From Macrostomum lignano (Eukaryota), in the NCBI GenBank assembly GCA_002269645.1, contig NIVC01001372.1:124001-188000 (forward strand): a stretch of DNA of 64,000 nucleotides, in the 5' to 3' direction. Position numbers and translations under genes: made by a program. The notes beneath the pieces were generated by a model, which saw only the letters and a list, made by a program, of their open reading frames with translations, was not told the DNA's origin and searched no databases. This document shows, piece by piece, positions 6,215 through 37,231 of the stretch; within the stretch, counting starts at the first letter, position 1; every line of letters starts with the position of its first letter.

Positions 6215-6219
6215 AACCA

Positions 6220-9200: not shown

Positions 9201-12200
9201 TAAATCTGTTACATTTAAGGCTCTTCCTCGTAGAATATGATTGGCTCTTGCACCTCTTGCATGACCAGGGTACAGTGTTGGCAATTGTGACTCCTACCCC
9301 GTTGTTGTACTTTCTGCACCGTTTTTTGTCTACCCCTTTAGCCAATGAAAAGGCAGTTAAATTAAAATCATGCCCGTACAACACAAGTTAGGTGAGTATC
9401 ACAAAGAAATCGCATGTCTATTTCTTCCGAACCAAACAGAGTGAAATCCCAGGTAGCTCGCCTATCGAGCCTAATGCCTGTTGCTAGGCAGCTGGAAACT
9501 CAATTGGCGCTGCGCGAAGCTCAAGTAACTCAACTCACTGATGCGCTCAGTCGACGGGAACACGAAAACCGGCAACTTCTCAGCGTAAGAGAGTTTTTTT
9601 CGATGCAAAACTATTCTCGCTATTTAGTTGTCTGGCCCTTTATCATAGACAATTTAGAGTGCACCATCTTTTCTATCATCATAGACACCTGAAGCATATG
9701 TGGCTCACCATCATCTTACATGTACACACTTAGGTGTCTGGTCTATTCCACCATCATAGACATTATGGGTGTTTCTCGTCTGGCCCGATCCATCATAGAC
9801 ACTTTAGATGTCCAGCATCAAAGACATTCTGGGTGTGTTTGGTCTGGTCCACCATCATCGACATTCTGAGTGCGTCTGGTCTGGTCCACCGTCATAGACA
9901 TTCTGGGTGTTTCTGGTCTGGTCCACCATCACAGACATTCTGGGTGTTTCTGGTCTGGTCCACCATCACAGACATTCTGGGTGTTTCTGGTCTGGTCCAC
10001 CATCATAGACATTCTGGGTGTGTCTGGTCTGGCCCGATCCATCATAGACACTTTAGATGTGTTTGGTCTGGTCCACCATCATAGACATTCTGGGTGTGTT
10101 TGGTCTGGTTATCACTGATTTGTATGCAAGTCATCCAAATGTACACGATAGACAGTCAGACGAATAAGTTTTTAAGTTATGTTCTGTCTCTTTTCGCTCA
10201 AAAATTAACTGTATAACATTGTATTGCAGCATCACAAATTGCTCTCGAATGCGTGACTTTGCGTCGATATTGCTAGCTCTATACCAAAACAGCGCATATT
10301 CCACACTTTTCACAATCTATTTAAGGCGAATGCTCAACTCAACAAGGCTCTGAAGTCTGTAGAGGTGAGTCAAACCTGAGTCCTGTAACTAAAGAAAGTT
10401 ACACAATTGCAACTTACTTAATGGATAAAATCAATCAGCATGACCAAATACGAGTAGAAGCAGTTTGTAATTGCTGCGGCTCTACGCTGCAATTAAGCCT
10501 CCACTTTTCTGTACTGTTTTCGTTGCAGAGGGTGCAAGATGATCATACAATAAGTTCACAAACGGAGCAAACCGCATCTCCAAGCGATGAGTAAGTCAAC
10601 TGCTTTAAATGAAATATTCTGTTCAAACAAACTTTTGTTGTCGACTCAATATCGGCATTACATGGCTCGTATTTGGTTGCTAAAAAGACTTTTTACTTTT
10701 AGGAAATAACTTTCCACAAAAACTTTCCGAAAAACTGAACTCATCTTTGATTTCTTAAAAAATAAATATTCTACCTTTCCTAAATCCATTTCAGACATAG
10801 AGTCGAGAAAGATCAAAAAGCGATGACAGACAACGAGAATCAACTGGAGCATAACGAAACAACTCACTCATCAAATACAGATTTAGGTTTGTTTGTTGCC
10901 TCATATAATTTTGCCCGACCAAAACCGAAATCCTTAAACCTTGACGAAATTTACCAAGGACTGCTACAATCTCTTTTTCAGTGAAACGCCTGATCCCGAT
11001 GGCGCCCTCAACAGTTCGCAGTTTTGACTACGTTAAACAGCAACTGGACGAGTCGCAAGCGATTCTTAAACGTCAACAGGAGCTTCTGGACGAGATGGAC
11101 GAGGACCGAAAAGCGTCTGCCCCGGGAGCCAGACAGCGTCATTTGCCAGAAAGTGCCGCACGTCGGCGAGGTGTTGCGGCTTTCCGTTCTCGGTCGTTGA
11201 CGCCCGATTCTGGCCAGCGAGGCGCCGCGCTCTCTTCAGCTGGTGGTAGCGAAATTGGAGATTCAATGCAACAGCTAATTGCTGATGGGTTAGCTCTTTT
11301 CTCCTGATTTTTTGGGCTGGAGGGAGTTTAGCGATGGGTACAGTGGGAAGTCGCTTGCATTTTTCAGCTAACCCTTAAAGCGTTAGATGCATCGTTTTGG
11401 ACTGAGAGTTAATACCGGCCAGGGAGGTCCCCCGCGGTGTCGCCAGCGGCTATGTTGCTCCCTCATCTTAGGGGGTATCCGGGAGATAGCTGATTAAAGT
11501 TTTAACATTTACAAGCTTACGTTATTGATTTTTAGTATGAATGTAGTCCCTAATATATGTGTAAGTGAGTCGTCTAGTCCGCGCCCGGTCCTGGCGAAGT
11601 GTCCTGCGGGTCAAAGTCTTGATTTACGTAAATTTTATCATTGTTGAAGGGTTTTGACGTGTTAAATAATTAGATGATTGAGTCGAGGGCTTAAGCAGAG
11701 CTGAAACTGCAGCTACTTAAAATACAGTTCTTTATCAGGGCTTTATAGTGTAGGCAGCGCAGTTTTTAGAAATTCAGTACGAAGTGCAAGTATTGCTTTA
11801 GCAATTTGGTTTTTAAGCAACGATTTCCTCTCATTTTAGTCGTCAGAAGGACGCCACGATTCGCTCGCTGAGTGGCCAGGTTGGAAGTCTTTTGGCTGAA
11901 CGCGACGAGCGCTCGGCTAATCAGGCCCACGTCCGAGATGGCCTACTCGACCTGGAGGCCGATCTGGACCGATTGGCTGACCTACCGGAGGCTGCTAATT
12001 TACAACACGAACTGCAGCCTCTGATGGAGAAGGTACGCAGACTCACTCGACGAGCAGCCATAGGTGAACGCACGGATGTACATTCTCGACAAAGGTTGGG
12101 TGACACTACAGCCAGCTTTTCAGACGATGGATTGCACGAAATCCCAATAAGAACAGCTGATCAATGGCAGCCACAGCAACAGCCGCAGGGTATGCCGATG

Positions 12201-15200
12201 GGAGCGCCTGTTGAACAGCAGCCCCAACAACAGCCGCAGGGTATGCCGATGGGAGCGCCTGTTGAACAGCAGCCCCAACAACAGCCGCAGGGTATGCCGA
12301 TGGGAGCGCCTGTTGAACAGCAGCCCCAACAACAGCCGCAGGGTATGCCGATGGGAGCGCCTGTTGAACAGCAGCCCCAACAACAGCCGCAGGGTATGCC
12401 GATGGGAGCGCCTGTTGAACAGCAGCCCCAACAACAGCCGCAGGGTATGCCGATGGGAGCGCCTGTTGAACAGCAGCCCCAACAACAGCCGCAAAGTATG
12501 CCGATGGGAGCGCCTGTTGAACAGCAGCCCCAACAACAGCCGCAGGGTATGCCGATGGGAGCGCCCGTTGAACAGCAGCCCCAACAACAGCCGCAGGGTA
12601 TGCCGATGGGAGCGCCTGTTGAACAGCAGCCCCAGCAGCAGCCGCAGGGTATGCCGATGGGAGCACCTGCTGAACAGCAGCCACAGCAGCAGCGAAATCA
12701 GTCACATATGCCAATGAGTTTCTCAATGGACGACTCATCATCAAACGATGCAGCGGAATCTACAGAGTATTTAAAAGACTCTGACGTGTACTATGACGCT
12801 GTCGACGGGAAAACTGTTGAAGGCACAAACCAAAAGAAGCCCAGCAAGAAAATGAGACGCTCCAAACCTTCAGCTAAAAGCAGTATGCTCGACAAGAAGC
12901 GAGATGGCCAACTTTCCGATGAACAATCCAGTCATCCAATTTTTGATGCGCCTGCTCGTAATGATACTCACTCTGAGCACACCTTAACAAGGCCTATTGT
13001 CAGCAATTCACTAAACGATGAACTTTCGACTGATTCCACAGCGTCTTGGACGTCACTCGATAAGTCAAAACTTGAAAAATCAGCTGCGTCGGTTACTGAA
13101 GACGACGCTCAAGAGAAAATCAAGCCAACTAAAGAGAACCTGGGTTCTCGAGTTAATCAGGAGAAATCCGATTTAATTGACAATCGAACTGTCGCTCAAC
13201 CCAGCTCTGCTCCAAAGCCTGACCGAGACAGTTTCGACGGCCTGCCAAATGCAACTAGTCTGCAGTCAGGTGAAGAGCCACATCAGGATAGGGACGGACC
13301 TGAAGAACAGCATCAGCTCCCTATGAGAATGAGGATTCCCATGTCCTTGTCAAATACTGCTGACGGAACCTATCCAGATTTTGCAGACAACTCTGGTAAA
13401 GATCTAGAGTCTGTAATGACGAAAAAAGAATCCTCTTTAATGAGTGCTGCTCCAGAGACCTACGAAGGTAAATACAGGTTAGAACCAACAGATGGCATCG
13501 ATTCTCGGACAGGTACGGCGCTTGATAAAGACGTAAGATCTAAAGAACATGTTGGTGAAGAACAAAAACCTCGTAGTCAACGGCTTCGAAAGCCAGAAAG
13601 CCCTCTTCAAATTTCAGGAGTTACTGATCAGATTCGTCTCGATAGCTTAAGTGGGTCAGAGAAACAGTCAACTTCCGAGTCGATTAAAACTGAGAGTAGT
13701 AAAAAGCCACGGAAAAAAAGCGGAAGAAGAAGAAAAAAGAACAAAAAGTCTAAGTCAACTCGCCAGTCGACATCCGATGGAAGTCAAGATTGGCATTCTG
13801 GAAGTACTGATGATGACAGTGGATCCAAAGATGTAAAATATGGTAAAGAAAGAAAAGAAGCATCGTTTGAGCAATCAAGTCAAGCAAAATCCAGTGGCTC
13901 CGACAAAAGCGACGAGGCCTCTGTGAAGAAGCCATCTGCAAAGCGATCAACAAAAAGGGACAATAGACAGAAAGCTTCTGCTAAAGCTAGTAAATCTAGT
14001 TCTGATGAAGTCCACAGTGACTTGGATTCGGAAAAAGCAAAAATAAAGTCAGGCTATGATGGTAAATTTTCAAAAGCGCCACATGCCGAAGCAAAGGCAG
14101 ATGCAATCGAAGCAACTCAAGCCCCGAGCCATGGTTCGGTTGATTTTGATTCTCAACATGGTATTCAAAGTTTAGAACCGGCCCAGACTCAATCGGATTC
14201 TCGCAAATACACCATGAGAGAATTGCCCGTTCAGAGTGATAACGATGACAAAGATCCAAAAAAATTACCAGGTGTAAGCGGCAGCTCTATGGCAAATCAG
14301 TTTACTGATGAAAGTCAATCCAAAGATACGATGTCAAGTCCAAACAGCAGTGAAGGTCATATCGACTCGGACTCACCCAAAAAGTTAAGAAAAATCGTCT
14401 CTGACAAGTCGATTTCCCATTCTTCTGCCGTCGATATCGTCGAAGCTAAGGATCCTGCCGAGGAACCTAGAAGCCAACTGTTCAATAATAGTCAACCTGA
14501 TTTACCCAGGCTGTCTGTTGAGCGTCCAGTCGATCCTGCGAAACATGAACAGCCCTTTGATCTTCGCGACACCAACTCTAAGGAAGATCCGTCTGGAGAA
14601 AGGTTTTTTGAAGAACATCAACAACAGGCTGATAGTAGTGAGCCAAAAAGCCACCCTCCTATGAGTGGGCAGCTAGATCAGAACGAATGCGATAAATCGG
14701 CTTCATCAAAGCAAGGAGCTGGCCCTTCCGACTTCGACTCTGGCGGACCAAACAAGCAAGATCCGCAAAGTCGATTGGCAGAAAACAACCCTAGAGCAGC
14801 AAATGAGAATAGACGTTATCCCTCTGTGGACAAGTCCGAAAGTCTATCGAGTTCTTCGGAAGGGAATTCTGAGACATCGCAGCCAGATGAGCTACGTGAT
14901 AATTTCGGAACCCAACAATCTGACAGACGCCAGTCTCAAACATCGGAAAACGAGCCTGGTGACAACTCTTATGACAATCAGCAACCTCATTCAACGAAAG
15001 GCACGTTAAAAGACCCGCATCCAAACAGTCCATCGTACACAAAACCAGACGGCAATTCAGTAGATCAAATTGGCGAAAGGTCTGCAATGAGATCGTCCGA
15101 AAACCATCCAGTGGATCCTTTAGACGAAAAGTCTGGAAAAGGACTGTCAGACAGCCATTCAGTCCATTCAAAATACGAGAACGCTGGAATGAAACCATCT

Positions 15201-18200
15201 GACAGCCAAGAAGAGGACTCAACTGACGGAATTTCAAATGCAAGATCCATTAAGACCCATCATCCAGTGGTTCCAACAGATAATAGGTCTGAAATTAGGC
15301 CTCCCGACCGGGACATAGCGGATTCAACAGAAGGGAAATCAGATATGGGACCGTCCGACAAACGTCTAACAGATTTAACTGACAAAAAGTCAGATATGAG
15401 ATTGTCCGACAGAGATCCAGAAGAATCGACGGACGAAAGGTCCGGACCGAGACCCTCGATCGGTCATTTAGCGAAGCAAACAGAGAAACCGTCTGGAATT
15501 CAAAAGTCAGACAATCACCCAGGGGATTTAACGGACGAAAAGTTAGACATAAGACCGTCCGACAGACATCCAGCAGATTCAGCAGGCGAGGAGTCTCGAG
15601 AGGGACCCTCCGACGGAAATCTAGCTAATCAAGCTGACAAAAAATCTGATCGCCATCCAGTAGATCCAACAGACAAAAGGTCAGATGTACGACAGTCTGA
15701 CACCTATCCAGTAGGTTCAATCGACGAAAGGGCTCGATTGGAACCATCCGGCAGCCTTCTGACTGATCCAACTTACGAGAGGTCTAAAATGGGGCTCACA
15801 GACACTCATCCAATGGAGTTAACTATCGAGAAGTCAGATATGAGACCATCTGACAGCCAATCAGTATATCAAAGAAACGAAAGGTCTCGAATCGGACTGA
15901 CCGACACCGACCCAGTGGATTCAACTGACGAAAACTCAGACATGGGACTTTCCGACAGACAGCCAACGGTTCCAATAGAGTCAAGAGTGCAACAGCCAGA
16001 CCGCAACTCACACGACTCATCAGTCGAAAGGTCAGATATGAAACAGTTTGACAGCCATCCAATCGATTCAACCGCTGAAAGATTTGGATTGAGACTCTCT
16101 GACAATCGTCCAGAGGATGCAACGGACAAGAAATCTGAAATGAAACAATTCGACAGACGTTCAGCAGATTTAACCGAAGAAAAGTCTGAACTGAGACCCT
16201 CTTTAACGCATCCAGTGGATCAGATAGACGAAAAGTATGGGATCACACCGTCCGATAATCAATTAGCGAATCAAACTGACGGGAAGTCTGGAATGCAACA
16301 GTCAGACCGACATTCAAAGGATTCAGTGGACGAAACGTCGGATATGAGACGATTCGACAGCCATGTAGCGCATCCTTCATACATAAGATCAGATACGCGA
16401 CCGTCTGACACCCATCCAGCGGATTCAACAGGCGAAAGGTCAGATCTGAGTCCGTCTGAGAGCCATTCAGGGAATCCCCCAGACAACGGCTTTGGAATGG
16501 GACCATCAAAAAGCCATCCAGCGGATTTAACAGACGAACAGGCAGACATAAAACCATCTGTCAGACATCCAGTAGATCGAACAGACGTAGGCTCAGATTT
16601 AAAACCGCTTGACAGTCGTTTAGTAGGTGCAAAAAATGATGCGTCCGATAATTCCAACAAATATTCAGCGAATTCCACAGACGGAAAGTCAGACATGGAG
16701 CCGTCCGACAGGTTTGCAGCGGGTTTAGCAGACGAAAAGTCTCAAATGAGCCCATCCTCCTACAGCCATCTAGTGGATCAACACAAAACAAATTTAGAAA
16801 CGCTTCCTTCACATGATCGTCAATTTGATGCAATAGAGAGCATGTCAGAAAGGCTTCCTTCGGATAATCTTCAGCCTGAAACTACTGAGGACAATCCAGT
16901 AATATTGCCTTCAGACATTTCTCAAACTGATCCGAGAATATCAACAATTCCGCCTCCAGAGAGCCGTCAGGCTAACGCAGCTCAGAAAAGATTGCAAACG
17001 CCTCCTCTAGACCGTTCTCATACTGATGTATCTGAATGCAGTTCTGGAATTTTGCCTTCAGACGGTTACAAGCCTGACGGAACGAACAGCATGTCGAGAA
17101 GAGCTCATTTGGATGGTCATCAATTTGACGCAATTGACGGCACCTCAGAAGTGCCTCCTTCATACGTTCAGCAGTCTGATGCAGCTGAGAGCACATTAGG
17201 TATACCTCCTTTAGACGGTCATCATCCTGCTACAACGAGGGAAAACTCAGAAATGCTTTATTTAGGCGGTAGTGAACTTGCTGCCACTGAGAGTGCGCCT
17301 TCCAACCATGCAATTTCTGACGATGAAGATCATCCTACTGCAACTGGTATTAAGTCGAGAACAAGTCCTTCGGGTGGCCGTGAACATGATGCAGCTGAGG
17401 AAAGCTCTGGAAAATTTTCTTCAGACGGCCATTCACCTAATTTAATTGAGACTAGGTCGGTGATGCCTTTAACTGACGGTCCTCAGCCTGAATCGAATGA
17501 AAACAGCTCAAAGATGCTGCTTTCAGACGGTTGCCAGAGAGAAGCAGCAGAGAGCATGTCAGGAACCCCTCTTTCAGATGGTCATCAGTCTGCTACAGTT
17601 GATAGCACCTCAGAAGTGTCTCCTGTACATGGTCGTCAACCAGATACAACAGGGAACACCTCTGAATTTCGCAAACCTCATAAAACTGAGAGCACATCAA
17701 GAATGCTACCTTTCGCAGGTTATCGGCCTGATGAAAGAAACAGCATTTCAAAAAAACCACCTTCAGATGATCTTCAGCCTGAAACGGCCAAGGACAGGTC
17801 TAAAAAAGAGCTTTCAGATAGTCATCAATCTGACCTAACAGAGGGCGACTCAAGAATTCTGCCTTCAGACGGTCGTCAACTTGATGCAACCGAAATTGGC
17901 TCAAGAACGCTGTGTTCAGGCCAGCCTGATACGGCAGAGAGAACCTTGGAAACGCTGTCTACAGACGACAATCGGCAGGATGCAACTGAGAGCAGGTCGC
18001 AAATGTCTTCTTCAGCCGGTCGTCTGCCGGAAGCTAGCAAATTCAACTCAGAAATGCCGCGCTCCGACGGTAATAAGCATCGTGCAGTAGAGAGCAAGTC
18101 AGAAATGCCGTGTTCAGGTGTTGGTCAGCCTATTAAAATTGACAGCACTTCAGAAGTGCCTCCTTTAGACGGTCATCAACCGGATGCAACTGAGAGCATG

Positions 18201-27200: not shown

Positions 27201-30200
27201 GACACCACAGAACAAGCTGAAGCCAGGCTTCCTCGTCAGCTTGAGGATCAGTCCGTCTCGCCGAGTGACACAACAGATCAAGCTGAAGCAATACTTCCTC
27301 GCCAGCTTGAGGTTGAATCGAGTGCCACCAGATATGAGCAGAAAGATGCTCGTCCTCGACAAAGTTCGGATGTTTCTGATTCTCAAGGTCGTATCAACAA
27401 GCCTTCAGATGAGTCCGTCTCACCAAGTGACACCACAGATCAAGCTGAAGCCATGCTTCCTCGTCAGCTTGAGGATAAGTCCGTCTCGCCGAGTGACACC
27501 ACAGATCAAGCTGAAGCAATGCTTTCTCATGAGCTTAAGGGTGATTCGAGTGCCACCAGAGAAGAACGAAAAGATGCTCATCGCCGGGACATTTCGGATG
27601 ATTCTAAATCCCCCAGTGATCTCGAAGGTCGTAACAGCAAGCCTGCAGATGAGTCCGTCTCACCAAGTGACACCACAGATCGAGCTGAAGCCATGCTTCC
27701 TCGTCAGCTTGAGGATAAGTCCGTCTCGCCGAGTGACACCACAGATCAAGCTGAAGCAATGCTTCCTCGTCAGCTTGAGGATGAGTCCGTCTCGCCGAGT
27801 GACACCACAGATCAAGATGAAGCCATGCTTCCTCGTAAGCTTGAGGATGAGTCCGTCTCGCCGAGTGACACCACAGATCAAGCTGAAGCCATGCTTCCTC
27901 GTCAACTTGAAGGTGAATCCAGTGCCACCAGAGAGGAACAGAATGATGCTCATCGCCGGGACATTTCGGATGATTCTGAATCTCCCAGTGACTCCGAAGG
28001 TCGTGCCAGCAAGCCGGCAGATGAGTCCGTCTCACCAAGTGACGCCAAAGACCAAGCTAAAGCCATGCTTCCTCGTCAGCTTGAGGATAAGTCCGTCTCG
28101 CCGAGTGACACCACAGATCAAGCTGAAGCAATGCTTCCTCGTCAGCTTGAGGATGAGTCCGTCTCGCCGAGTGACACCACAGATCAAGCTGAAGCCATGC
28201 TTCCTCGTCAGCTTGAGGATGAGTCCCTCTCGCCGAGTGACACCACAGATCAAGCTGAAGCAATGCTTCCTCGCCAGCTTGAGGTTGAATCGAGTGCCAC
28301 CAGATATGAGCAGAAAGATGCTCGTCCTCGACAAAGTTCGGATGTTTCTGATTCTCAAGGTCGTATCAACAAGCCTTCAGATGAGTCCGTCTCACCAAGT
28401 GACACCACAGATCAAGCTGAAGCAATGCTTCCTCGCCAGCTTAGGCGTGAATCGAGTGCCACCAGATATGAGCAGAAACATGCTCGTCCTCGACAAAGTT
28501 CGGATGATTCTGAATCTCCCAGTGACTCCGAAGGTCGTGCCAGCAAGCCGGCAGATGAGTCCGTCTCACCAAGTGACGCCAAAGACCAAGCTAAAGCCAT
28601 GCTTCCTCGTCAGCTTGAGGATAAGTCCGTCTCGCCGAGTGACACCACAGATCAATCTAAAGCCATGCTTCCTCGTCAGCTTGAGGATGAGTCCCTCTCG
28701 CCGAGTGACACCACAGATCAAGCTGAAGCAATGCTTCCTCGCCAGCTTGAGGGTGAATCGAGTGCCACCAGATATGAGCAGAAAGATGCTCGTCCTCGAC
28801 AAAGTTCGGATGTTTCTGATTCTCAAGGTCGTATCAACAAGCCTTCAGATGAGTCCGTCTCACCAAGTGACACCAAAGATCAAGCTGAAGCCATGCTTCC
28901 TCATCAGCTTGAGGATGAGTCCGTCTCGCCGAGTGACACCACAGATCAAGCTGAAGCAATGCTTTTTCATGAGCTTAAGGGTGATTCGAGTGCCACCAGA
29001 GAAGAACGAAAAGATGCTTATCGCCGGGACATTTCGGATGATTCTAAATCTCCCAGTGATCTTGAAGGTCGTAACAGCAAGCCTGCAGATGAGTCCGTTT
29101 CACCGAGTGACGCCAAAGACCAAGCTAAGGCCATGCTTCCTCATCAGCTTGAGGATGAGTCCGTCTCGCCGAGTGACACCACAGATCGAGCTGAAGCCAT
29201 GCTTCCTCGTCAGCTTGAGGATAAGTCCGTCTCGCCGGGTGACACAACAAATCAAGCTGAAGCAATGCTTCCTCGCCAGCTTGAGGTTGAATCGAGTGCC
29301 ACCAGATATGAGCAGAAAGATGCTCGTCCTCGACAAAGTTCGGATGTTTCTGATTCTCAAGGTCGTATCAACAAGCCTTCAGATGAGTCCGTCTCACCAA
29401 GTGACACCACAGATCAAGCTGAAGCCATGCTTCCTCGTCAGCTTGAGGATAAGTCCGTCTCGCCGAGTGACACCACAGATCAAGCTGAAGCAATGCTTTC
29501 TCATGAGCTTAAGGGTGATTCGAGTGCCACCAGAGAAGAACGAAAAGATGCTCATCGCCGGGACATTTCGGATGATTCTAAATCCCCCAGTGATCTCGAA
29601 GGTCGTAACAGCAAGCCTGCAGATGAGTCCGTCTCACCAAGTGACACCACAGATCGAGCTGAAGCCATGCTTCCTCGTCAGCTTGAGGATAAGTCCGTCT
29701 CGCCGAGTGACACCACAGATCAAGCTGAAGCAATGCTTCCTCGTCAGCTTGAGGGTGAATCGAGTAGCACTGTGTCAAGTAATTCGAGCTCTAACAAAGA
29801 CGGGGAATCGATTAAGAAACAGAATCGGCATCATACTGAGCTACATGTAGCAGAAGATCCTCCGAAAAGTGAATCTGGCAGTGAGAAATTCCATAAAATA
29901 AATGAAGAAACTGGAGACCATTGTCGGAAAAGTATTGACGAGTCATCCTCGAGCTCTTTGTCGGTCTCTGATAAGGACGAGAATTCAGAATCAGAATCAG
30001 AAAAACCTATTTTGCCAAAAGAAAGTCAACAAGAAAGGGAACGAAAAAGAAAACTAGCCAGGCAAGAGGCGGCTTTTTCAGACCATCCAGCAGAACACAA
30101 AGGATCCTTTAGCGATGAAGAGGGAAGCTCAGAGCAGAAAATTTCACCGACTGAGAAGATACCCATCGATCAGAAGGTGAAGTCCATGCCCGTTGATCTT

Positions 30201-33200
30201 CCAGGGCCTCAGCCATTGGATGACGACACAGAACTGACTATTAACTCGTCACAGATTTCAGAGAACCCGGATGTACAAATTCTGCCGCCAGAAAAGATAT
30301 CATTTCGAAATTTCGATTTCGATGATTATGATCATGAGGATTATATTCATTCAAGCCAGCCTCACCTGCTTGATGATATTTCGGAGAGAACTGAGCCCGA
30401 GGATGACTATTACTCACAGAGCGAATATAGCGGCTTTGCTACGCCTTCAGATGTTCCAGACAGCATGGTCGAGAGCACAGATGGCTCTCATGGTGTAGCA
30501 GCACGCTCGCCAAGAAGACAATGGAGTCTAAGCAATGGAGAATTTCAGAATTATGACCAGACCAGCTCTGGTATGTTGCCGCAGTCAGCGATAGAGACAC
30601 GCAAAGAACAAGTTGAAATCAGTGACAGCGACACGGACACTGGAACAGTTTCAAACAAGAAATCAACGGAAGAGTCTGATGCTGAAACTGAACCCGGTCC
30701 TACTGGTAGCTCGTCAAGTACCAAAGACGCTCTAACTGGTGAATCAAAACCTGAACCAACAACTCAGAAACCCAAGACATCACCTGTTGAAATTACGAGA
30801 GTAACTAATCCCAACCAACAACTAATCGATGAGCAAGCAACTCGTGACTCAATAGACTCTGTTAAGACTGTTATCGAGAACTCTCCGACAAATTTTGGTG
30901 CGTCTATTTTAGCTCAGCAATTGCAAAATCAGGAATCATTGAGCGATTCTGCCAGTAACAGCGACACGGATGCTCATTTATCTTCGAAAAGTATGGACAG
31001 TCCTGCTCCTGAAATTGCAGAAACTTGTGCAAAAGCTACACCAAAGAGGTCAGAGGAGAACACCTCTCTCAGTAAAGATAAAACTTTCTCACAAAATCAA
31101 GATGTCGCGAGCGAGAAAGATCGGAACACAGATGAAAAAGAAGCTAGGCAGTTTGGGCGCTTAGACTCTGAAGAAATTGAAGAAGTTATTGCTTCTGAAG
31201 AGGCAGCGATCGCAGCGAAAGCTCCAAATGTTTCAGAGGGGCAGAAAAATCTTCTTACTCAGGAAGAGCCTCGAAATCTTTACAGCGAGCAATCCGACAC
31301 CGATTATTCATGCGCCAAAGCCACAAGGGAGATGATGGCAGAAGTTGACAGTAGCCACACTGATACCGACATGCTTGTGGAACAGCTACTAGCTGGGACA
31401 GCGACTGACAATGATATCGATGAGGATTTCGATGAAATAGCATCTGTTGAAAATCTAAAGGGTGGGGTTAAAAGATCCAATAAAGAGCCTACAGAAGCTT
31501 CTAAATTGGAACAAGATGATAGCGCCGCTAAGCAGAAAAGGACGAGAACTCCTAAGCGCCCGTCATCAGAAGAGGCCACTTCGTCTTCTGAAGAAGAAAA
31601 AGCTAGAGGCAAACAATTCAAGAAAGTTCGCAAAACTGGAGAGACACGTTCGCACAGTGGCTTATCGGATTCGTCTGAAGAAACTTGGGATGTAAAGCCA
31701 AGAGAACGTCAAGAACCTCACGATGTCAAGTCATCGGACAGCAATGCAAGTAAAGTCATGCCAAGAAGACCAAATGCATCCGGTATTGTCCCTGATGCGG
31801 ATTCTAAGAAAGCTTCCAGTACGCAGGAAATAGATTCGTCAGGTTCATCTGAAAATTTTGAAAGCGTAATCCCAACACATGAAGAGAAGAAACAGACGCA
31901 AAATGCTTCGATTTCCCGTTCGACTAAAAAATTGGAAGACGGCGAGCCAGTGCATAAAAAGAAGCATCATAGCAGTTCAGAATTTGAGTCACCAGGTGGA
32001 AGTGATAGCGACACTGGACTAACAAGATCAAAGGGACTTGCTGGAGAGGTTGCTGATGAGGCTGCAAAACAAGAAGTCTCTATACAAGAAAGCAATGACT
32101 CTGGGTCAGAAAGTTCATCTGAGGAAGCTGCCGACCAGAAATTAAAACGAAATAGACCACAGCCAAAATCTCAAATTTCAAAGGATAGAAAAACGGCAGA
32201 GGATAATGAAGTGAAGCAATCACACCAAGAGGAATCTGCACCAAAAGAATCAACTGGATCCACGGATGCCAATAAGATGGAGAGGACGCCTAGAAAATTT
32301 CCAGTAAGCTCTGATGCATCAGATGAGGTCAGCAATGAGAAGTCAAAGAAGAGATACATGGATTCTCAATCAGATTCGTCAGAAACATCTGAACAAACAA
32401 ATCAGTCTGAACAATCAGAAAGGTCTCTATTTTCTCAGGCACCCGATGAAACAACGAACAGTGAACTGAAGCCCGCACAACGCAATGTCACTCAAAAAAA
32501 TTCATCTGAAGATGAGGCTGAAGTGGTGCCAACCAAAGAATCCTTACGACCTGGTGCATTAGCAAAAGTCAACAATAACAAACCAGAAACGAAGCAAAGA
32601 CGTTCTCTAGAATCACCAGAACAAGTTGAAGCACCCGAGCCAACAGACGAATATATGAAACCGGAAACAGACGAGATGATTCAGGAATCGACACCAAAAC
32701 AATCACCTGACTCATCTGATAGCAATGAGGTAGAAACGACTCTGAACAAAGATCCGGAAAATTCCGATACATCGGATCAAGTCCATGATCGGAAGACAAG
32801 AGGAAAGCAAATGCATCCTCTTTTAGATTCACCAACAGAATCCATTCAAATCAAAGATATTGAGACAATGTCTTCATCCGAAGCAACTAAGGACCCTGAA
32901 AAACAGCCAGGACAGCAAGAGATGACTCAAGACTCAAAAACTCTGGAATCATCGGACTCAACTGATGATTATAAGGTGAAAAGGACACCTAACAAAGTTC
33001 CAGTAATAAGATCCGACGCATCTGGAAAAGTCGCTAACACAAAGTCTAGAAGGGAACCCAAACATTCGCTGTCTGGCTCAACAGAAGCATCCGATCAAGC
33101 CGAAGACACCAGAGATTCAAATTCTTCATTGTCTAATGCATCTGCCGAAACCGAAAATGATATCCAGCCAGCAAAACGCAAAGTGGGTCAAGATTCCACT

Positions 33201-36200
33201 GTAAAAGAACCATCGTCTGATAGTGGCAAGACGAAAAAGGCTCCGGAAAAAGCGTCAGTAAGACCTAATACATCAGAAGAGGTTGGAGGCAACAAGCTAC
33301 GAAAAAGCTCGAGCAACTCGGTGTCAGATTCATCAGAAGCAACAGAACAAGTGAACGAAGCTAAACTGACAGAACGATCGCCGCTTTCAGAGCCATCTAA
33401 GGCTAAATCTGATGATGAGGTGAAAGAAACGATTAGCAAAGTACTAGCAAGATCCGATGCATCTGGAGAAGTCAGTAACACAAAGTCTAGTAGGAAGCCC
33501 ATACGTTCTCTGTCTAGCTCATCTAATTCGTCTGATAGTGATAAGATGAAAACGACTTCGGACAAAGTGTCAAATGCATCAGAAGAAGGCGAAATTCCCA
33601 GAATCTTGGTGTCAGATTCACCAGAAGCTTCAGAATACGCAAATGAACAGTCGGAACGATTGCCGCTTTCAGAACAATATAAGGCTAAAGACGAGAGTGG
33701 TGTGAAGCCAGCACAGAGAAACGTGATTTACGAAGCAACACCACATGAATCTGTTAACTCATCTGATGACGATGGGAGAAAAACTGCGCCGGAAAAAGTA
33801 CCACAAAAGGTCGCTGGAAAAAGTACAAGAAGGAAGCAAAATAAGTCTCAATCTGAGCTAGTCGAAGACACTCAACAGTCAGGAAGATCTTCCATTTCTG
33901 AAACTTCCGAAGCAGCAGAAGACAACAGTGTGAGTTCAGAACAAAGCAAGGCAATTCGGGAAGCCACAACCAAGTCAAATGAATTATCAGATTCATCTGA
34001 GGTGGAAACGGCACGGAGAAACGTTTCAACAAAGCCCAGTTCTGCCGGAAAATATACTGATAAAAAATCAACTACAGGTGAAACACGCTCTCTATCCGGC
34101 TCCTCAGAAGCCTCCGAGCAAGTAAATGAAGACAGAAAAGCATCTAAAACAATTGAGGACCCTAAAGTAAAACTCAGAAAGCAAGGAGCCGCTTTGGGAC
34201 CGAATGAAAGCACTCGGGAAAGATCTCACTCTGATTCTTCAACTGTATCAGAGGAAACTGTCGAAAAAGTAGAAAGCCAACTGAAAGAATCAAGAAAGCA
34301 AGTGTTCAAACCGTCTAAAACAGGAAAGGACAGACAAATCGCCGAGTCTTCAGATGATGAGGAAGTTCTAAGGTTGAACCAAAACCTTCAAAAGGTCAAT
34401 TCTCGGTCAAGTTCATCAGATTCAAATGAAAAAATCAAGGAAGAACGACCGAGTAGGTTTCAAAAACAATTTAGAACCTCATCCATGTCTGAAACGTCGG
34501 AGGCCACTGAGAGCAGTGAGATGAAGCCCAGACAGCGTGAAATGTCAAATTCACCTACTGAATCATCCGAATTAGCTTTGAAGGAAGAAACTCGAGGGAA
34601 GACTAAAAAACTTGACGAGCGTAACGAATCATCAGCCAATGAACTGTCGGACACTTCCATTAACAAATATGCGAAACCAAAACGTCTTGAGGCACAACAG
34701 AGCTCACCAGATCGTTCGTCAATCACAGGAGGTGAAACGCCAGAGGAAGTTCAAGCAGCAGCAAGCCTATTGGAAAATTATCGACAAGAAGAGCGGTCTA
34801 GTTCGGAGTCATCTGAGTCATTAGAGCAGAGACGCGACGGAAATATGTGGGAACAAGAAGCAACGGAGATGTTAAAACAGGAAACTGATCGCAAAACAAG
34901 GTCTACTAGCAATTCTAAGATAACACCTCTGAAAGATCTCACTGATAGGCGTGGAAAAGAATATCAAAGTGACGACTCAAAAGATTCCTTATCACAATCG
35001 TCAGAAAACCTTGAAATTGTGTCGACGAAACGAAGATCAGAAGACCCGAAGAAGCGTCGCAGCGTCTCAAACGAGTCCCAGGCAAATGATCGGTTAAACA
35101 AAAAATCTTTCGCCAATGACTCTGATCAAGAAAGTGACTCAACTATAACGGCAGCTGAAAACATAGAAACAAAAGCAACCAAGAGCAGTGGACATGGCAA
35201 TGAGGTTGATGAATACAGTAATGAGGATTCGATAATGTCAAGTGTTCAGACAAGTCCTAGAAGTGGGGTCAGGGGCGCGCGTTCTGTGCCCGATCTGAGA
35301 CTTCTAAAGTCTGACGAGTCAAGCCTCAGTTCAGATGTCGACCGACAGCTCCAAGAATTCAATAGCCTTGTATCGAAGAGTGCATCTCAGAAGTTTGACT
35401 CCTTGGACCATCAAACACTGCTTGGTGACAGTTTGGCTCTGAAGCATCGCAGCAGCTCAGAATCAGAGGTTATCTCCGAACGAATGCTAGCCAAGGCTCA
35501 GGATCCCGAGGAGGAGAAAGAGTTAACCATTGTGGTCTCTGAAAGGCGCAAACGTGAAATAGCTAAGAGCCTGCCATCCATTGCCCTGCTCAGTAGCAGA
35601 AGAGCCAGCAATCAATCTCACACAACAATCGACTCAATGGTTCTGCAGCAATCCAGTCTGCACGAAGCTGATTTCGACAGACAGCGAAACAACTCCGCTA
35701 GCGATTCAACTAGCACCACTTCGACTTCTGAACGATCCACAGTTAAAATTTCAATCAAAGACTGGCGCAACAGATTGGCATCATCCAAAAGTTTGCCCTC
35801 GGTTTTGGCAATGTCAAATGACGGGGCCGAGCCAAACGTCCGGCGAACGGTCCGACAGTCTCACAAAAAACAGGTACCGAGAGATAGCACGGTGGCTAAA
35901 AATCAAAATGAGTCAGTTCAAGGTGGCAGTTCATCTATCGCCCCGACACAGACTCCAGTTCGGGCAAGCGCACAAGGCGGAGCGGTTTCTGGTTCAAGCA
36001 AGCAACCTAAGGAATTTTCTTCCGGCTCAGACAACGAAGATGTGTACGGAACTCCCTCACGGCGCCAGCTGATTCTTGCACTGCGTTCCTCAAAAGAGAA
36101 GGGTCTAGCTGAGCACATCCAGGATCTTCTGACTCGGAAGGTCAGGAAAAGACAACTGCTACTTCTAGAAGACGGGACCCAACTGCGGAATCTCCACGTC

Positions 36201-36287
36201 GACCACCTCTTCCGGTTATGCGACCTGCCCGGGATGTCAGCGTCAAAAAACAACCAAACCAGCCGATTCGCTCAGTCTCACCTGTGA
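6220..36287 (+). CDS. Giant intracellular coiled-coil plus Ser/Asp/Glu-rich repetitive protein: join(6220..6374,8439..8736,9044..9162,9440..9584,10326..10364,10529..10590,10795..10886,10982..11288,11840..36287), ~8,554 aa
   Basis: Eight GT-AG introns whose phases (2,0,2,0,0,2,1,2) all match and keep one frame into the 8,131-aa ORF. Heptad-like segments ELIQLKRENAELNNKVKSQVARL..QLETQLALREAQVTQLTDAL..LNKALKSVE and QQLDESQAILKRQQELLDEM. No signal peptide, TM segment or recognisable globular domain. Confidence 0.85.
9700..10110. repeat. 37-bp minisatellite (CTGGTCTGGTCCACCATCATAGACATTCTGGGTGTGT) in intron 4 of the giant gene
   Basis: About 10 degenerate copies; TTCTGGGTG recurs at 9901 and 9938. 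Confidence 0.85.
12168..12692 (+). repeat. Coding 51-bp tandem repeat, 10 near-identical copies of QQPQQQPQGMPMGAPVE (17 aa)
   Basis: Directly visible in DNA and protein. Confidence 0.97.
15050..18850 (+). repeat. Coding degenerate 17-aa repeats: PSDRHPxDSTDEKSDMR type (~15.05-16.8 kb), then LPSDGRQPDATESSSGM type (~16.8-18.85 kb)
   Basis: Recurrent PSD/LSD..HP/QP..D..E motifs spaced 17 residues apart in the long ORF. Confidence 0.75.
23620..29765 (+). repeat. Coding composite array of 22-aa unit A (ESVSPSDTTDQAEAMLPRQLED) and 36/32-aa unit B (ESSATRYEQKDARPRQSSDDSESPSDPEGRYSKPAD), arranged as A(1-4)B
   Basis: 66-bp and 108/96-bp units are visible, with long internal block duplications (e.g. 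~27.3-27.8 kb repeated at ~29.3-29.8 kb). Confidence 0.95.
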
Positions 36288-37231
36288 AAAAGCGTCGGCG
36301 AACGTCGAGCCAGAATGCGGGCAAGCCCCCAAAACGCGGAGACAGCGATGATAGCGAAGATGTTCAGCGCAGAAGAGCAGAAGACGCTAAAATACATCAC
36401 GCCTTGATAGACGAGGCCCGTCGACAAGCGCGTAAAAAAGCATTGAATGAGAATGAAGGAGACAGCTTAGCTGAATCAACCAGCATCGAGTCGGATAGCG
36501 AGTTCAGCGAAGTCCGCCCGGTTCAACATCAAACTGACGCTGCAGCACCAGTTGCGACTTCCCGTGGCAGAGCAAATCCTACTGCGCTTGCTGAGAGACC
36601 TGGCATCAAGAAGGACGCCATCGAGCGAGAAGAACAGAAGCCGAATCGCCTCGAGAAGAAATCGATTTCTACTACACCTACAAATTCTACGCCACCAACT
36701 ATCGTCGTCCGAAGACCGAGATCCGAATCGCTTAGCATGGAAGCGGAACCTGAACTGCGCTTCACATCTAGCAGCTTGGGACGATCAAAATCGATCAAGT
36801 TGAGATTAGACTCGTCCTACGAGACACTCTACGATGGCAATCCAATCGAAATAGAAGCCGGTAACAACCAGAATGACGGCCAAGAGAGCGAAGAGGCCGA
36901 TTCTTCGTCGCTGTATGAGCCGCCACCGAGGATGCTCGGATTGGAAATGGGCGATTTCGAGTATCCTGCCGAAGATCAGTCCGGATCATCAACTCCAACT
37001 AACTCTTTCCAAGACTTTCTGTAAGTTGCGAAAAAAATGACTTGTGTTCAGTGTCTATCTGCCACTGATGTTATATTGTGAACTGCAATCCTAACTTCCT
37101 TCAGGCCACCCGAACAACTAGTGGCTATTCAGCAGGAGGGCGCAGCAGACCTTCCACCAGATCTGACAACCTCGGAGCAAGTATTCGGCCGGAGTGTACA
37201 TGATCCCGACGAAGAAGCAGATGCGCTTTAA
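36113..37231 (+). CDS. C-terminal continuation of the giant gene in the -1 frame: 36113..37020 spliced to 37105..37231
   Basis: The -1 frame is open from 36113 with the same S/E/R/P-rich composition. It ends at donor CT/gtaagt (37021), followed by an 84-nt intron with ctaac branch point, acceptor ttccttcag, and a phase-matched last exon LPPEQL..DEEADAL*. Joining it to the main ORF needs one extra base or a -1 frameshift (total ~8,841 aa). Confidence 0.75.

What the first reader, a model, noticed from the sequence alone, without database searches (positions are those of the whole stretch)
11840..37020. A single ~25.2 kb coding exon encoding a giant acidic disordered protein
Seen: from the acceptor at 11839 one frame stays open for 24.4 kb, and the next convincing donor is at 37021. 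The preceding eight exons are only 39-307 nt. The product is S/D/E-rich, almost devoid of hydrophobic segments, lacks a signal peptide, and has short N-terminal coiled coils. Established: the largest known coding exons (titin, MUC16, giant ankyrins, Futsch/MAP1B) also encode repetitive disordered spacers. This exon is of that order or larger but has no ankyrin, Ig or mucin domain. Inference: a lineage-specific giant cytoskeletal, ciliary or elastic spacer anchored by its N-terminal coiled coil.
Basis: partly seen in the sequence, partly recalled or inferred. Interest (0 to 1): 0.85.

Follow-up and report, generated by a model that had tools for sequence, protein, structure and literature searches.

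The report
Giant 25-kb exon, flatworm orphan protein
A real gene of the flatworm Macrostomum lignano carries one 25-kb coding exon (30 kb in its second genomic copy) that encodes a roughly 1-megadalton acidic, serine-rich, unstructured protein with no relatives outside this species, and public annotation holds it only as two truncated "hypothetical proteins".

Summary
The window is Macrostomum lignano Mlig_3_7 contig NIVC01001372.1. Eight short exons (155, 298, 119, 145, 39, 62, 92, 307 nt) splice in one frame into an exon at 11840-37020 (25,181 nt). A 127-nt terminal exon follows, with a stop codon and AATAAA.

The frame is open for 24.4 kb but stops at 36285-36287. The cause is a 1-nt deletion at 36115 relative to the second genomic copy.

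The second copy (NIVC01000010.1) has the same ten exons. Its giant exon is 30,219 nt and uninterrupted, giving 10,521 aa.

Between the copies, all other exon indels keep the frame. No nonsense change occurs where about 10 are expected. Missense change is near neutral.

The product is 8,841 aa after repair, about 970 kDa, pI 4.8. It has N-terminal long helices, no Pfam domain, no signal peptide and no transmembrane segment. Searches with three parts of the protein (N-terminus, mid-region, C-terminus) found no homologue outside M. lignano.

GenBank models PAA68769.1 and PAA94490.1 are truncated by repeat-collapse artefacts.

Function is inferred: a coiled-coil-anchored polyanionic disordered spacer or scaffold. 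It is a new member of a known kind, of moderate interest.

The parts
6220..6374 (+). Exon 1, coding part (ATG at 6220; donor GAG|GTACGA). An AG at 6184-6185 just upstream could be a spliced-leader acceptor; this was not tested.
   Evidence: Maps exactly to aa 1-51 of GenBank PAA68769.1. The sequence was read. The gene start in the record (130220) equals window 6220.
8439..8736 (+). Exon 2 (298 nt)
   Evidence: AG/GT boundaries and frame continuity. Used by PAA68769.1.
9044..9162 (+). Exon 3 (119 nt); the long helix starts here
9440..9584 (+). Exon 4 (145 nt), coiled-coil helix
10326..10364 (+). Exon 5 (39 nt)
10529..10590 (+). Exon 6 (62 nt)
10795..10886 (+). Exon 7 (92 nt)
10982..11288 (+). 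Exon 8 (307 nt)
11840..37020 (+). Exon 9, the giant coding exon (25,181 nt). The homologous exon in the second copy is 30,219 nt.
   Evidence: Open frame 11817-36287. Acceptor and donor. Collinear with L002 16522-46740, which is uninterrupted.
12167..12693 (+). 51-nt x 10.3 tandem array encoding QQPQQQPQGMPMGAPVE. It is 102 nt (two units) shorter in the second copy.
15100..19300 (+). About 1,400 aa of old, degenerate 17-residue periodicity (motifs like SDMRPSDxHPxDSTDEK and SGMLPSDGRQPDATES). The boundaries are approximate.
   Evidence: Autocorrelation peaks at lags 17, 34 and 51, at 0.23-0.26 against a 0.08 baseline.
23622..29765 (+). Young composite tandem array. A 66-nt unit (DESVSPSDTTDQAEAMLPRQLE) is interleaved with a 174-nt unit, giving higher-order periods of 240, 306 and 372 nt. 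All 56 of the 66-nt copies are in one phase. The array is about 11 kb in the second copy.
   Evidence: The +1 frame of the array is also open (ORF 26455-29850), as a by-product.
36115..36115 (+). Site of the 1-nt deletion relative to the second copy (GAGC-ACATCC against GAGCAACATCC). It causes the frame break.
36285..36287 (+). TGA that ends the frame as assembled. The 57 codons before it (36116-36284) are read out of frame.
36116..37020 (+). True C-terminal coding part of exon 9 (phase -1 in this assembly). It contains one confident helix (residues 79-118 of this stretch) and basic clusters, one of them KKRRR.
   Evidence: 303-codon open frame. dN/dS 0.33 against the second copy. AlphaFold2. 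Fragment P0006 matches it.
37021..37104 (+). Intron 9 (84 nt, GTAAGT...cttcag)
   Evidence: The splice is confirmed by the independent model P0006, which reads ...FQDFL|PPEQLV....
37105..37231 (+). Exon 10, terminal (127 nt coding). TAA at 37229-37231 and AATAAA at 37230-37235.
   Evidence: Conserved in L002 at 46822-46948.

Best explanation
SHOWN.
- This is a real, transcribed, ten-exon, protein-coding gene of Macrostomum lignano. Its locus tag is BOX15_Mlig022597g1, on contig NIVC01001372.1, where record position = window position + 124000.
- Exon 9 (window 11840-37020, 25,181 nt) encodes about 95% of the protein.
- With the missing base at 36115 restored, the CDS is 26,526 nt. That gives 8,841 aa, about 970 kDa, pI 4.8 and net charge about -519.
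- As assembled, the protein would stop at codon 8,555.
- The second genomic copy encodes an uninterrupted 10,521-aa (1.16 MDa) version from a 30,219-nt exon.
- The exon grew by in-frame tandem duplication of short modules: 51 nt; a 17-aa unit that is now degenerate; and 66 nt plus 174 nt.
- Selection keeps the frame open and in phase, but hardly constrains individual residues in the bulk of the exon. The last ~300 aa are constrained.

INFERRED.
- The N-terminal long helices (aa ~170-480) dimerise or anchor the molecule.
- About 8,300 residues of strongly charged, net-acidic, serine-rich, probably heavily phosphorylated chain then act through bulk properties: length, charge and disorder. The likely roles are entropic spacer or brush, or multivalent scaffold. 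Folded domains play no part.
- Basic clusters at aa ~1,030-1,045 and ~8,300-8,700, and the conserved C-terminal helix, are the likeliest partner-binding or targeting sites.
- The cell type and compartment are unknown.
For: Identity of the locus.

Gene structure:
- All nine introns are GT-AG with pyrimidine-rich acceptors.
- The structure is the same in the second copy.
- It matches GenBank PAA68769.1 for exons 1-9 and P0006 for the exon 9-10 junction.
- The GenBank annotation derives from genome-guided RNA-seq assembly plus TransDecoder (PMC5730564). This indicates transcription and splicing of at least exons 1-9, up to window position 22290.

Coding constraint:
- The frame is open for 8,156 codons against about 427 expected stops.
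- Between the two copies there are 277 substitutions in 6,573 aligned codons. About 10.2 nonsense changes are expected and none is seen, P about 4e-5.
- Exon indels are 102, 3, 3, 6, 9, (2+1), 6 and 9 nt, plus the single 1-nt deletion. In the 3' flank 13 of 16 indels are not multiples of 3 (Fisher p = 0.014).
- Indel density is 0.5 per kb in the exon, against 21 per kb in the 3' flank and 9.6 per kb in introns.
- Among the 56 copies of the 66-nt unit, pN/pS is 0.48 in frame, against 0.79 and 1.05 out of frame.
- dN/dS between copies is 0.98 for 11841-24450, 0.76 for 29766-36110 and 0.33 for 36116-37020.

Protein properties:
- No Pfam domain and no PDB sequence match.
- AlphaFold2 gives long helices only: N-terminal 173-260 with pLDDT above 90, 313-348, 393-480, and one C-terminal helix.

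Orphan status.
Against: - No expression, localisation or phenotype data were found, so the functional part is inference from composition and architecture.
- dN/dS near 1 over most of the exon is also what a decaying sequence would show. Only the absence of stops and frameshifts argues for function.
- Synonymous divergence in the exon (about 1.3-1.5%) is well below intron divergence (4.7%). This suggests gene conversion between the copies, which could itself have helped keep both frames open.
- RNA evidence beyond window 22290 is indirect: only the C-terminal fragment model P0006.
- The AlphaFold2 runs were single-sequence and of low overall confidence (mean pLDDT 59 and 53).
Confidence: 0.55

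Rival explanations
1. The 1-nt deletion at 36115 is real, and the window copy is a damaged duplicate. It would make a protein that ends at codon 8,555 with 57 out-of-frame residues. Its stop would lie 734 nt upstream of the last intron, making it a possible nonsense-mediated-decay target. The copy on NIVC01000010.1 would be the intact gene. This is compatible with the main explanation for the gene family.
For: - The deletion is in the assembled sequence and lies in a mere AA dinucleotide, not a long homopolymer.
- M. lignano is a neopolyploid with about 180 Mb of duplicated blocks, so redundancy would tolerate such a loss (PMC5730564; PMC10733133).
Against: - It is the only uncompensated frame-breaking indel in about 19.9 kb of aligned exon.
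- The 300 codons downstream still show dN/dS 0.33, with 18 synonymous against 20 non-synonymous changes. They also keep the splice donor, the terminal exon, the stop and AATAAA. The lesion is therefore either very recent or an assembly or polishing error in a long-read assembly of near-identical duplicates.
Confidence: 0.3
2. The protein is nuclear. It would be a huge acidic serine-rich phosphoprotein with classical basic import signals that scaffolds a nuclear body or coats chromatin or chromosomes. It would work like Nopp140/Treacle, SRRM2 or Ki-67, rather than as a cytoskeletal or ciliary spacer.
For: - Basic clusters resemble monopartite or bipartite nuclear localisation signals. Examples are KKPRKKSGRRRKKNKKSK near aa 1,030 and PVKKRRRTSSQNAGKPPKR near aa 8,555.
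- Acidic Ser/Asp/Glu tracts alternate with Lys/Arg patches, and 30-40% of residues are charged throughout.
- There are 384 S/T-x-x-D/E sites.
Against: - The signals are judged by eye only and no predictor was run.
- There are no RS dipeptide repeats, no FHA, LisH or SRP40 domain, and no Pfam hit.
- Import of a ~1-MDa chain would be unusual.
- There are no localisation data.
Confidence: 0.2
3. Exon 9 is not used as one exon. Real internal introns or alternative splicing would remove large in-frame parts, as the gaps in the GenBank models might suggest.
For: PAA68769.1 skips 12363-12668 and 21804-21813. PAA94490.1 skips 51, 153 and 10,141 nt inside the homologous exon.
Against: - None of these gaps has GT...AG ends.
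- Three of the five lie between identical repeat flanks. The 10-nt one (AA..AC ends) is too short to be an intron and coincides with a 9-nt difference between the copies. These are the marks of repeat-collapsed or cross-copy transcript alignment.
- The 10-nt gap and the 10,141-nt gap shift the frame and create the premature ends of the models.
- The frame is kept open across the whole exon in both copies, which would be unnecessary for intronic sequence.
Confidence: 0.1
4. The long frame is not a functional coding sequence. It would be a purine-rich, repeat-derived stretch that happens to lack stops, or a recently dead gene.
For: dN/dS is about 1 over 12.6 kb. There is no homologue outside the species. 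The +1 frame is also open for 1,131 codons inside the repeat array.
Against: - log10 P(no stop) is about -190, and the other frames carry 240-953 stops.
- About 5,800 of the 8,156 codons are non-repetitive.
- No nonsense change occurs where 10.2 are expected, and indels preserve the frame across two copies.
- The exon is spliced to eight upstream exons in an RNA-based annotation.
- The terminal exon carries a stop and a poly(A) signal.
Confidence: 0.05
5. The protein is a secreted acidic matrix, gland or biomineral protein, comparable to phosphophoryn/DSPP or to an adhesive-release factor.
For: The extreme Ser/Asp/Glu content resembles secreted acidic phosphoproteins (the comparison rests on my own knowledge).
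Against: - The N-terminus MLHSAESYSGTPQRGRPLWHSGSARVG... has no hydrophobic signal core.
- No segment reaches transmembrane hydropathy.
- Cys is 0.2%.
- The N-terminal coiled coils and NLS-like clusters suggest an intracellular protein.
Confidence: 0.03

Closest known systems
AHNAK/desmoyokin, a giant single-exon intracellular protein (comparison from my own knowledge)
   Same: Almost the whole protein comes from one very large exon built by tandem duplication of a short module. It has no signal peptide and is a largely non-globular intracellular scaffold.
   Different: AHNAK has an N-terminal PDZ domain and about 128-aa repeats with a proposed beta-strand structure, and it is conserved in vertebrates. 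The present protein has no sequence similarity to it, is more acidic and more serine-rich, and is about 1.5-2 times longer.
Giant-exon neuronal scaffolds: 440/480-kDa ankyrin-B/G, MAP1B/Futsch, Big tau exon 4a
   Same: A lineage-restricted giant exon is inserted into a gene and encodes an extended, disordered, charged, phosphorylated spacer attached to an anchoring module.
   Different: Those exons are 2-16 kb (figures from my own knowledge) and sit in genes with defining folded domains: ANK repeats, ZU5-UPA and a death domain; MAP1 heavy- and light-chain domains; tubulin-binding repeats. None of these is present here. Here the anchor is only a coiled coil.
Titin PEVK / E-rich segments
   Same: Short (17-28 aa) proline- and acid-rich modules are repeated many times and evolve fast under a constraint on bulk properties. 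They serve as a model for an entropic spring.
   Different: Titin's PEVK is encoded by many small exons and is flanked by Ig and FN3 domains. Neither domain is found here. There is no evidence of muscle expression.
MUC16 exon 3 and other mucin giant exons
   Same: They are the size class of the largest internal coding exons (>21 kb; PMC3467050), are Ser-rich, and expand by tandem repeats.
   Different: Mucins are secreted or membrane glycoproteins with a signal peptide, Pro/Thr/Ser-rich repeats and SEA, VWD or Cys domains. This protein has none of these, is D/E-rich with only 5.9% Thr, and is predicted to be intracellular.
Acidic serine-rich nuclear phosphoproteins (Nopp140/NOLC1, Treacle, SRRM2)
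   Same: Acidic Ser/Asp/Glu tracts alternate with basic patches. There are many CK2-type sites. Function comes through disorder and multivalency.
   Different: There is no LisH or SRP40 domain and no RS repeats. This protein is 6-10 times larger. Its localisation is unknown.
Piccolo/Bassoon (UniRef's automatic name for fragment A0A1I8GX79 is 'Protein piccolo')
   Same: It is a very large protein with coiled coils, a Q/P-rich short tandem repeat near the N-terminus and large exons.
   Different: It has no Piccolo/Bassoon zinc fingers, PDZ domain or C2 domains. The name appears to rest on low-complexity similarity.

Membership tests
Piccolo/Bassoon (automatic UniRef name of P0003) | Double zinc fingers of the Piccolo/Bassoon type; PDZ and C2 domains (Piccolo); conserved coiled-coil regions CC1-3 | tested here: not met
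   hmmscan of the whole 8,156-codon frame and of the spliced N-terminus against Pfam-A gave no Zn-finger, PDZ or C2 hit. Full HMMER search of 1.84e9 representatives with the N-terminus returned only M. lignano proteins.
t-SNARE (automatic UniRef name of P0002/P0005) | A ~60-residue SNARE motif recognised by the Pfam SNARE/syntaxin models, usually with a C-terminal membrane anchor | tested here: not met
   No SNARE or syntaxin family hit at E<=1 on the 463-aa N-terminus. No transmembrane segment anywhere.
MAST kinases (automatic UniRef name 'MAST3' of P0006) | Ser/Thr kinase domain, DUF1908, PDZ domain | tested here: not met
   No Pfam hit on the C-terminal 303 aa or on the rest of the frame.
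ATG16 coiled-coil family | Score at or above the Pfam PF08614 gathering threshold (33.7 bits) | tested here: not met
   17.7 bits, E = 0.0042 over aa 103-198 of the query. This is below the cut-off and is typical coiled-coil cross-talk.
Giant ankyrins | ANK-repeat membrane-binding domain, ZU5-UPA supermodule, death domain flanking the giant exon | tested here: not met
   No Pfam hits. The upstream exons encode only disordered and helical sequence.
MAP1B/Futsch | Conserved MAP1 N-terminal domain, MAP1B repeat, C-terminal light-chain domain | tested here: not met
   No Pfam hits. No homologue found with the N-terminus or the C-terminus.
Titin/obscurin-type muscle giants | Arrays of Ig and FN3 domains | tested here: not met
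   No Pfam hits over the whole frame.
Mucins | Signal peptide; Pro/Thr/Ser-rich O-glycosylated tandem repeats; SEA, VWD, CysD or transmembrane modules | tested here: not met
   No hydrophobic N-terminal core or transmembrane segment. Thr 5.9% and Pro 6.9% against D+E 19.6%. No Pfam hit.
Giant single-exon intrinsically disordered scaffold (a descriptive class, not a homology family) | More than 10 kb of uninterrupted internal coding exon | tested here: met
   25,181 nt in the window (with one 1-nt lesion) and 30,219 nt, fully open, in the second copy.
Giant single-exon intrinsically disordered scaffold (a descriptive class, not a homology family) | Product lacks folded domains and is compositionally biased and disordered | tested here: met
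   No Pfam or PDB sequence match. AlphaFold2 shows only isolated long helices at both ends. 30-40% of residues are charged, with low hydropathy throughout. The central ~7,900 aa were not modelled.
Giant single-exon intrinsically disordered scaffold (a descriptive class, not a homology family) | The exon is transcribed and translated as one piece | not testable with these tools
   There is only indirect support: RNA-based GenBank models cover 11840-22290 contiguously apart from artefact gaps, and a separate fragment covers the 3' end. No read-level data are available here.

The most novel reading that the evidence does not exclude
The M. lignano pair (25.2 kb and 30.2 kb) is among the largest uninterrupted internal coding exons documented in any animal. 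The exons encode a species- or genus-restricted megadalton polyanion. Natural selection demonstrably preserves its reading frame while its amino-acid sequence drifts almost neutrally. This would be a clean natural example of a protein selected for length, charge and disorder rather than for sequence. It is also experimentally tractable, because M. lignano has RNAi and transgenesis.
Probability: 0.3. Interest if true: 0.6.

Novelty: new member of a known kind. Interest (0 to 1): 0.42.

Why it matters
- Annotation: both GenBank models of this gene (3,783 and 4,503 aa) miss more than half of the protein because repeat-collapsed transcripts were forced onto the genome. The true products are about 8.8k and 10.5k aa. 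Any expression, orthology or proteomic analysis that uses those models is affected.
- Exon biology: a 25-30 kb internal exon flanked by 551-nt and 84-nt introns exceeds the largest human internal exons. It is a useful test case for how splicing copes with extreme exon length in an organism with short introns.
- Protein evolution: frame preservation combined with near-neutral missense change gives direct evidence for selection on the bulk properties of a disordered chain. The nested generations of tandem modules show how such exons grow.
- Tractability: M. lignano is transparent, and RNAi and transgenesis are established in it, so localisation and loss of function can be tested directly.

Tried and rejected
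- Small intron to bridge the two frames at 36113-36287. I enumerated 103 GT...AG pairs of the right length class. None has a consensus donor or a pyrimidine tract like the nine real introns, so I rejected this in favour of the 1-nt deletion, which the second copy then confirmed.
- Apparent folded end in the original frame. I first read the last ~57 residues of the open frame (…IQDLLTRKVRKRQLLLLEDG…SHL*) as a possible structured C-terminus. They are out-of-frame sequence downstream of the deletion. The first homology search included this junk tail and found nothing.
- Alternative first-exon reading. The frame seen in old-assembly fragments P0002/P0005 (…TVERLSAGVHCGTADQHELELQG…) has no ATG and no usable acceptor downstream of the in-frame stop at 6212-6214. 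I preferred the ATG at 6220 with the donor at 6375, which matches GenBank.
- Region 2100-2900 as a 5' exon of this gene. It is the 5' end of the divergent ATG4 (Peptidase_C54) gene on the minus strand.
- Homology searches. Pfam on all parts, a PDB sequence search, and three big-database searches plus one exhaustive HMMER search found nothing outside M. lignano.
- Literature and supplement look-ups for Mlig022597 and Mlig001306, in full text and in the supplements of four M. lignano expression papers. No occurrences.
- Rfam and tRNA scans of the window found nothing.
- dN/dS on the repeat units selected by a protein regular expression was biased. I redid it with DNA-defined units.
- The N-terminal-exon dN/dS (0.93; 6 synonymous against 18 non-synonymous changes) has low power. 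One exon alignment was trimmed by a base, so I do not rely on it.

Full report
**1. What the window is**

A 424-aa ORF at 49207-50481 is encoded, identically, on contig NIVC01001372.1 of assembly GCA_002269645.1. Papers that cite this accession show it to be the Macrostomum lignano Mlig_3_7 genome. Record position equals window position plus 124000.

Neighbouring genes:
- An ATG4-type cysteine protease (Peptidase_C54) lies on the minus strand at about 363-2873.
- A DAZAP2 homologue lies on the plus strand at 40663-41127 (PF11029, E = 1.5e-29).

The giant gene therefore has to fit between about 2.9 kb and 40.6 kb.

**2. Checking the observation**

One plus-strand frame is open from 11817 to the TGA at 36285-36287, a run of 8,156 codons.
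- From base composition about 427 stops would be expected, so log10 P is about -190.
- The other five frames carry 240-953 stops.
- Composition is Ser 16.8%, Asp 10.2%, Glu 9.4%, Cys 0.2% and Trp 0.1%.

Upstream there are eight exons of 155, 298, 119, 145, 39, 62, 92 and 307 nt. They join in one frame through canonical GT-AG introns to the acceptor at 11839|11840. They are exactly the exons of GenBank protein PAA68769.1 (BOX15_Mlig022597g1, "hypothetical protein"), whose ATG is at window 6220.

**3. The flaw: a frame break before the donor**

The frame ends 734 nt before the donor. From 36113 to 37021 a different phase (-1) is open for 303 codons with the same style of sequence.

No GT...AG pair of suitable length looks like an intron.

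The second genomic copy (section 4) settles the matter. The window lacks one A at 36115: GAGC-ACATCC against GAGCAACATCC. The 57 residues before the assembled stop are therefore out-of-frame.

Downstream of the donor lies an 84-nt intron (37021-37104). It leads to a 127-nt terminal exon (37105-37231) that ends in TAA, overlapped by AATAAA. An independent fragment model from the older assembly (P0006) reads straight across this junction...NSFQDFL|PPEQLVAIQQ...EEADAL.

With one base restored, the CDS is 26,526 nt and the protein 8,841 aa. As assembled, it stops at codon 8,555.

**4. The second copy**

PAA94490.1 (BOX15_Mlig001306g1) lies on NIVC01000010.1 with the same upstream neighbours.
- Its locus (L002) is collinear with the window.
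- It has the same ten exons.
- It carries a single uninterrupted ORF of 10,056 codons through the giant exon.
- That exon is 30,219 nt. The full CDS is 31,566 nt, giving 10,521 aa, 1.155 MDa and pI 4.77.
- The size difference comes mainly from the central tandem array, about 11 kb against about 6 kb.

**5. Why the public models are short**

Both GenBank CDSs contain gaps inside the giant exon.
- In the window model the gaps are 306 nt in the Q-repeat and 10 nt at 21804-21813.
- In the second-copy model the gaps are 51, 153 and 10,141 nt.
- None has GT...AG ends. Three of the five lie between identical repeat flanks.
- The 10-nt gap coincides with a 9-nt difference between the copies.

These are artefacts of placing repeat-collapsed or cross-copy transcripts on the genome. 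The annotation pipeline used StringTie/TACO plus BLAT-mapped de novo transcripts, followed by TransDecoder (PMC5730564). The 10-nt gap and the 10,141-nt gap shift the frame and create premature stops at 3,783 and 4,503 aa.

The models nonetheless show RNA-based support for exons 1-8 spliced to at least 10-12 kb of exon 9.

**6. Is it under selection?**

I compared the two copies over 6,573 unambiguously aligned codons outside the young repeat array.

- Nonsense changes: there are 277 substitutions. About 10.2 of them should have created stops if unconstrained, and none did (P about 4e-5).
- Exon indels: these are 102, 3, 3, 6, 9, (2+1 within 9 nt), 6 and 9 nt, plus the single 1-nt lesion.
- Flank indels: in the 3' flank 13 of 16 indels are not multiples of three (Fisher p = 0.014).
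- Indel density: 0.5 per kb in the exon, against 21 per kb in the 3' flank and 9.6 per kb in introns.

Missense change, in contrast, is almost neutral over most of the exon:

| Region | dN/dS | Source |
|---|---|---|
| 11841-24450 | 0.98 | |
| 29766-36110 | 0.76 | |
| 36116-37020 (last ~300 codons) | 0.33 (18 synonymous, 20 non-synonymous) | |

Within the young array all 56 copies of the 66-nt unit are in one phase. Their pN/pS is 0.48 in frame, against 0.79 and 1.05 in the other two phases.

One caveat applies. Synonymous divergence in the exon (1.3-1.5%) is well below intron divergence (4.7%) and is patchy, at 0.2-4.6% per 600 nt. This points to gene conversion between the copies. Conversion weakens dN/dS inference, but it does not explain the lack of stops and frameshifts.

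**7. Anatomy of the protein (repaired window copy)**

- Size and charge: 970 kDa, pI 4.84, 1,696 acidic and 1,177 basic residues.
- Charge pattern: 30-40% of residues are charged in nearly every 100-residue window. Net-positive islands lie at aa 1001-1200 and 8301-8700, followed by an acidic tail.
- Hydropathy: there is no hydrophobic signal core and no transmembrane-grade segment.
- N-terminus: AlphaFold2 (single sequence) on aa 1-515 gives long isolated helices at 173-260 (pLDDT above 90), 276-348 and 393-480, with disorder elsewhere.
- C-terminus: the C-terminal 301 aa contain one confident 40-residue helix and nothing globular.
- Domains: Pfam finds nothing apart from a sub-threshold ATG16 coiled-coil match. 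The PDB sequence search finds nothing.

Repeat generations:
- A 17-aa Q/P-rich unit, 10 copies, at 12167-12693.
- About 1,400 aa with degenerate 17-aa periodicity.
- A young composite array of a 22-aa unit and a 58-aa unit, about 2,100 aa, at 23622-29765.
- About 5,800 codons that are non-repetitive at the hexapeptide level.

**8. Relatives**

- An exhaustive phmmer scan of 1.84 billion cluster representatives with the 463-aa spliced N-terminus found three proteins, all from M. lignano.
- The true C-terminus found only an M. lignano fragment.
- A 700-aa mid-exon segment and the first C-terminal query found nothing.
- The automatic UniRef names of the fragments ("Protein piccolo", "t-SNARE coiled-coil homology domain-containing protein", "MAST3") are not borne out by any defining domain.

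On this evidence the gene is an orphan at the level of available proteomes. Sister Macrostomum genomes could not be searched here.

**9. How it most likely works**

Shown:
- A transcribed ten-exon gene.
- A giant internal exon.
- A frame preserved by selection.
- Growth by in-frame tandem duplication.
- No folded domains; helical ends.
- A constrained C-terminal ~300 aa.

Inferred:
- The N-terminal helices form a coiled coil that oligomerises or anchors the molecule.
- The ~8,300-residue, strongly charged, net-acidic, Ser-rich chain has 384 S/T-x-x-D/E sites. It works through length, charge and disorder, as an entropic spacer or brush or as a multivalent scaffold.
- The basic islands and the C-terminal helix are the probable interaction or targeting sites.

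I put about 0.55 on this overall reading. The gene structure itself is above 0.9, and the physical mode of action is about 0.4-0.5. The compartment (cytoskeletal, ciliary or nuclear) is open. The NLS-like clusters make a nuclear role a serious rival, at about 0.2.

**10. Comparison with known systems**

The protein works like the giant-exon disordered scaffolds: AHNAK, giant ankyrins, MAP1B/Futsch, titin PEVK, and Ki-67- or Nopp140-type polyelectrolytes. It is a member of none of these, because every defining domain tested was absent (see the membership table).

In exon size it exceeds the largest human internal exons, MUC16 exon 3 at >21 kb and TTN at >17 kb (PMC3467050). M. lignano transcripts of up to 47.8 kb have been reported (PMC5730564), so a ~27-32 kb mRNA is within the known range for this species.

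**11. Verdict**

- One important correction applies: a 1-nt frame break at 36115, either an assembly error or a recent lesion.
- The gene is already in GenBank, but only as truncated hypothetical proteins.
- Function is unknown and is inferred from architecture.
- It is a new member of a known kind, and interest is moderate (0.42).

Noticed in passing
window 11840-37020 against L002 16522-46740; introns and flanks for comparison: The giant exon is about 3.4 times less diverged between the two genomic copies than the introns (about 1.4% against 4.7% mismatches), even at synonymous sites (dS 0.013-0.015). Divergence is patchy, at 0.2-4.6% per 600 nt. It rises to dS 0.089 in the last 0.9 kb. This pattern suggests mosaic gene conversion between the duplicated loci.
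   Followed up: partly
window 363-2873 (minus strand): A divergently oriented ATG4-type autophagy cysteine protease gene (Peptidase_C54, 501 aa in GenBank). Read on the minus strand, it contains the motif DAGWGCMLRCAQM. Several minisatellites (1-211, 798-1000, 1030-1266, 1745-1956) lie within or beside its span.
   Followed up: partly
window 40663-41127 (+): A DAZAP2 homologue (PF11029, E = 1.5e-29) lies 3.4 kb downstream of the giant gene. It has a QYPP-type 12-nt repeat at 40750-40817.
   Followed up: partly
window 54454-61093: A 6.6-kb satellite of a 40-nt unit (166 copies, 97% matches). It is followed by a GA-rich array (61449-62083) and a 16-nt satellite (62775-63932, 72 copies). These create long spurious ORFs on the minus strand (62502-63996).
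   Followed up: no
window 49207-50481 (+): A single-exon 424-aa ORF with an N-terminal hydrophobic leader, a Cys-rich middle and a Thr/Ser-rich mucin-like tail. It has no Pfam hit. It is present as a called gene in the public collection and was used to identify the contig.
   Followed up: partly
window 26455-29850 (+, +1 phase of the repeat array): The 66-nt-based array is also open in a second phase for 1,131 codons (MSPSRRVTPQIKLKQCFLVSLR...). Old gene models (P0003) wander into this phase. It looks like a by-product of the repeat and not an overlapping gene.
   Followed up: partly
window 4448-4837 (+), inside the intergenic/5' region: A GC-rich (about 60%) 130-codon open stretch resembles the C-terminal part of a retroelement reverse-transcriptase ORF. 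The only Pfam match is a weak DUF6451 hit. It is probably a transposon fragment.
   Followed up: no
window 6170-6220: A pyrimidine-rich ...tttttgtatttacag|CG acceptor-like site lies 35 nt upstream of the start codon, and a short out-of-frame upstream ORF starts at 6194 (ATGCAACAAATGGTATTATAA). Because many M. lignano mRNAs are SL trans-spliced (PMC5730564), this may be the trans-splice acceptor.
   Followed up: no
window 9810-10109 (intron 4); L002 13363-14973: A 37-nt minisatellite (8 copies) lies in intron 4. The homologous intron is 870 nt longer in the second copy (1,611 against 741 nt), so intronic repeat length differs between the copies.
   Followed up: no
window 42506-43030, 45165-45682, 47457-47681, 51436-51854, 52110-52837, 53367-53613: A dense series of 20-30-nt minisatellites lies downstream of DAZAP2. 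This fits the reported 15% share of simple and tandem repeats in this genome. Each produces spurious multi-frame ORFs.
   Followed up: no
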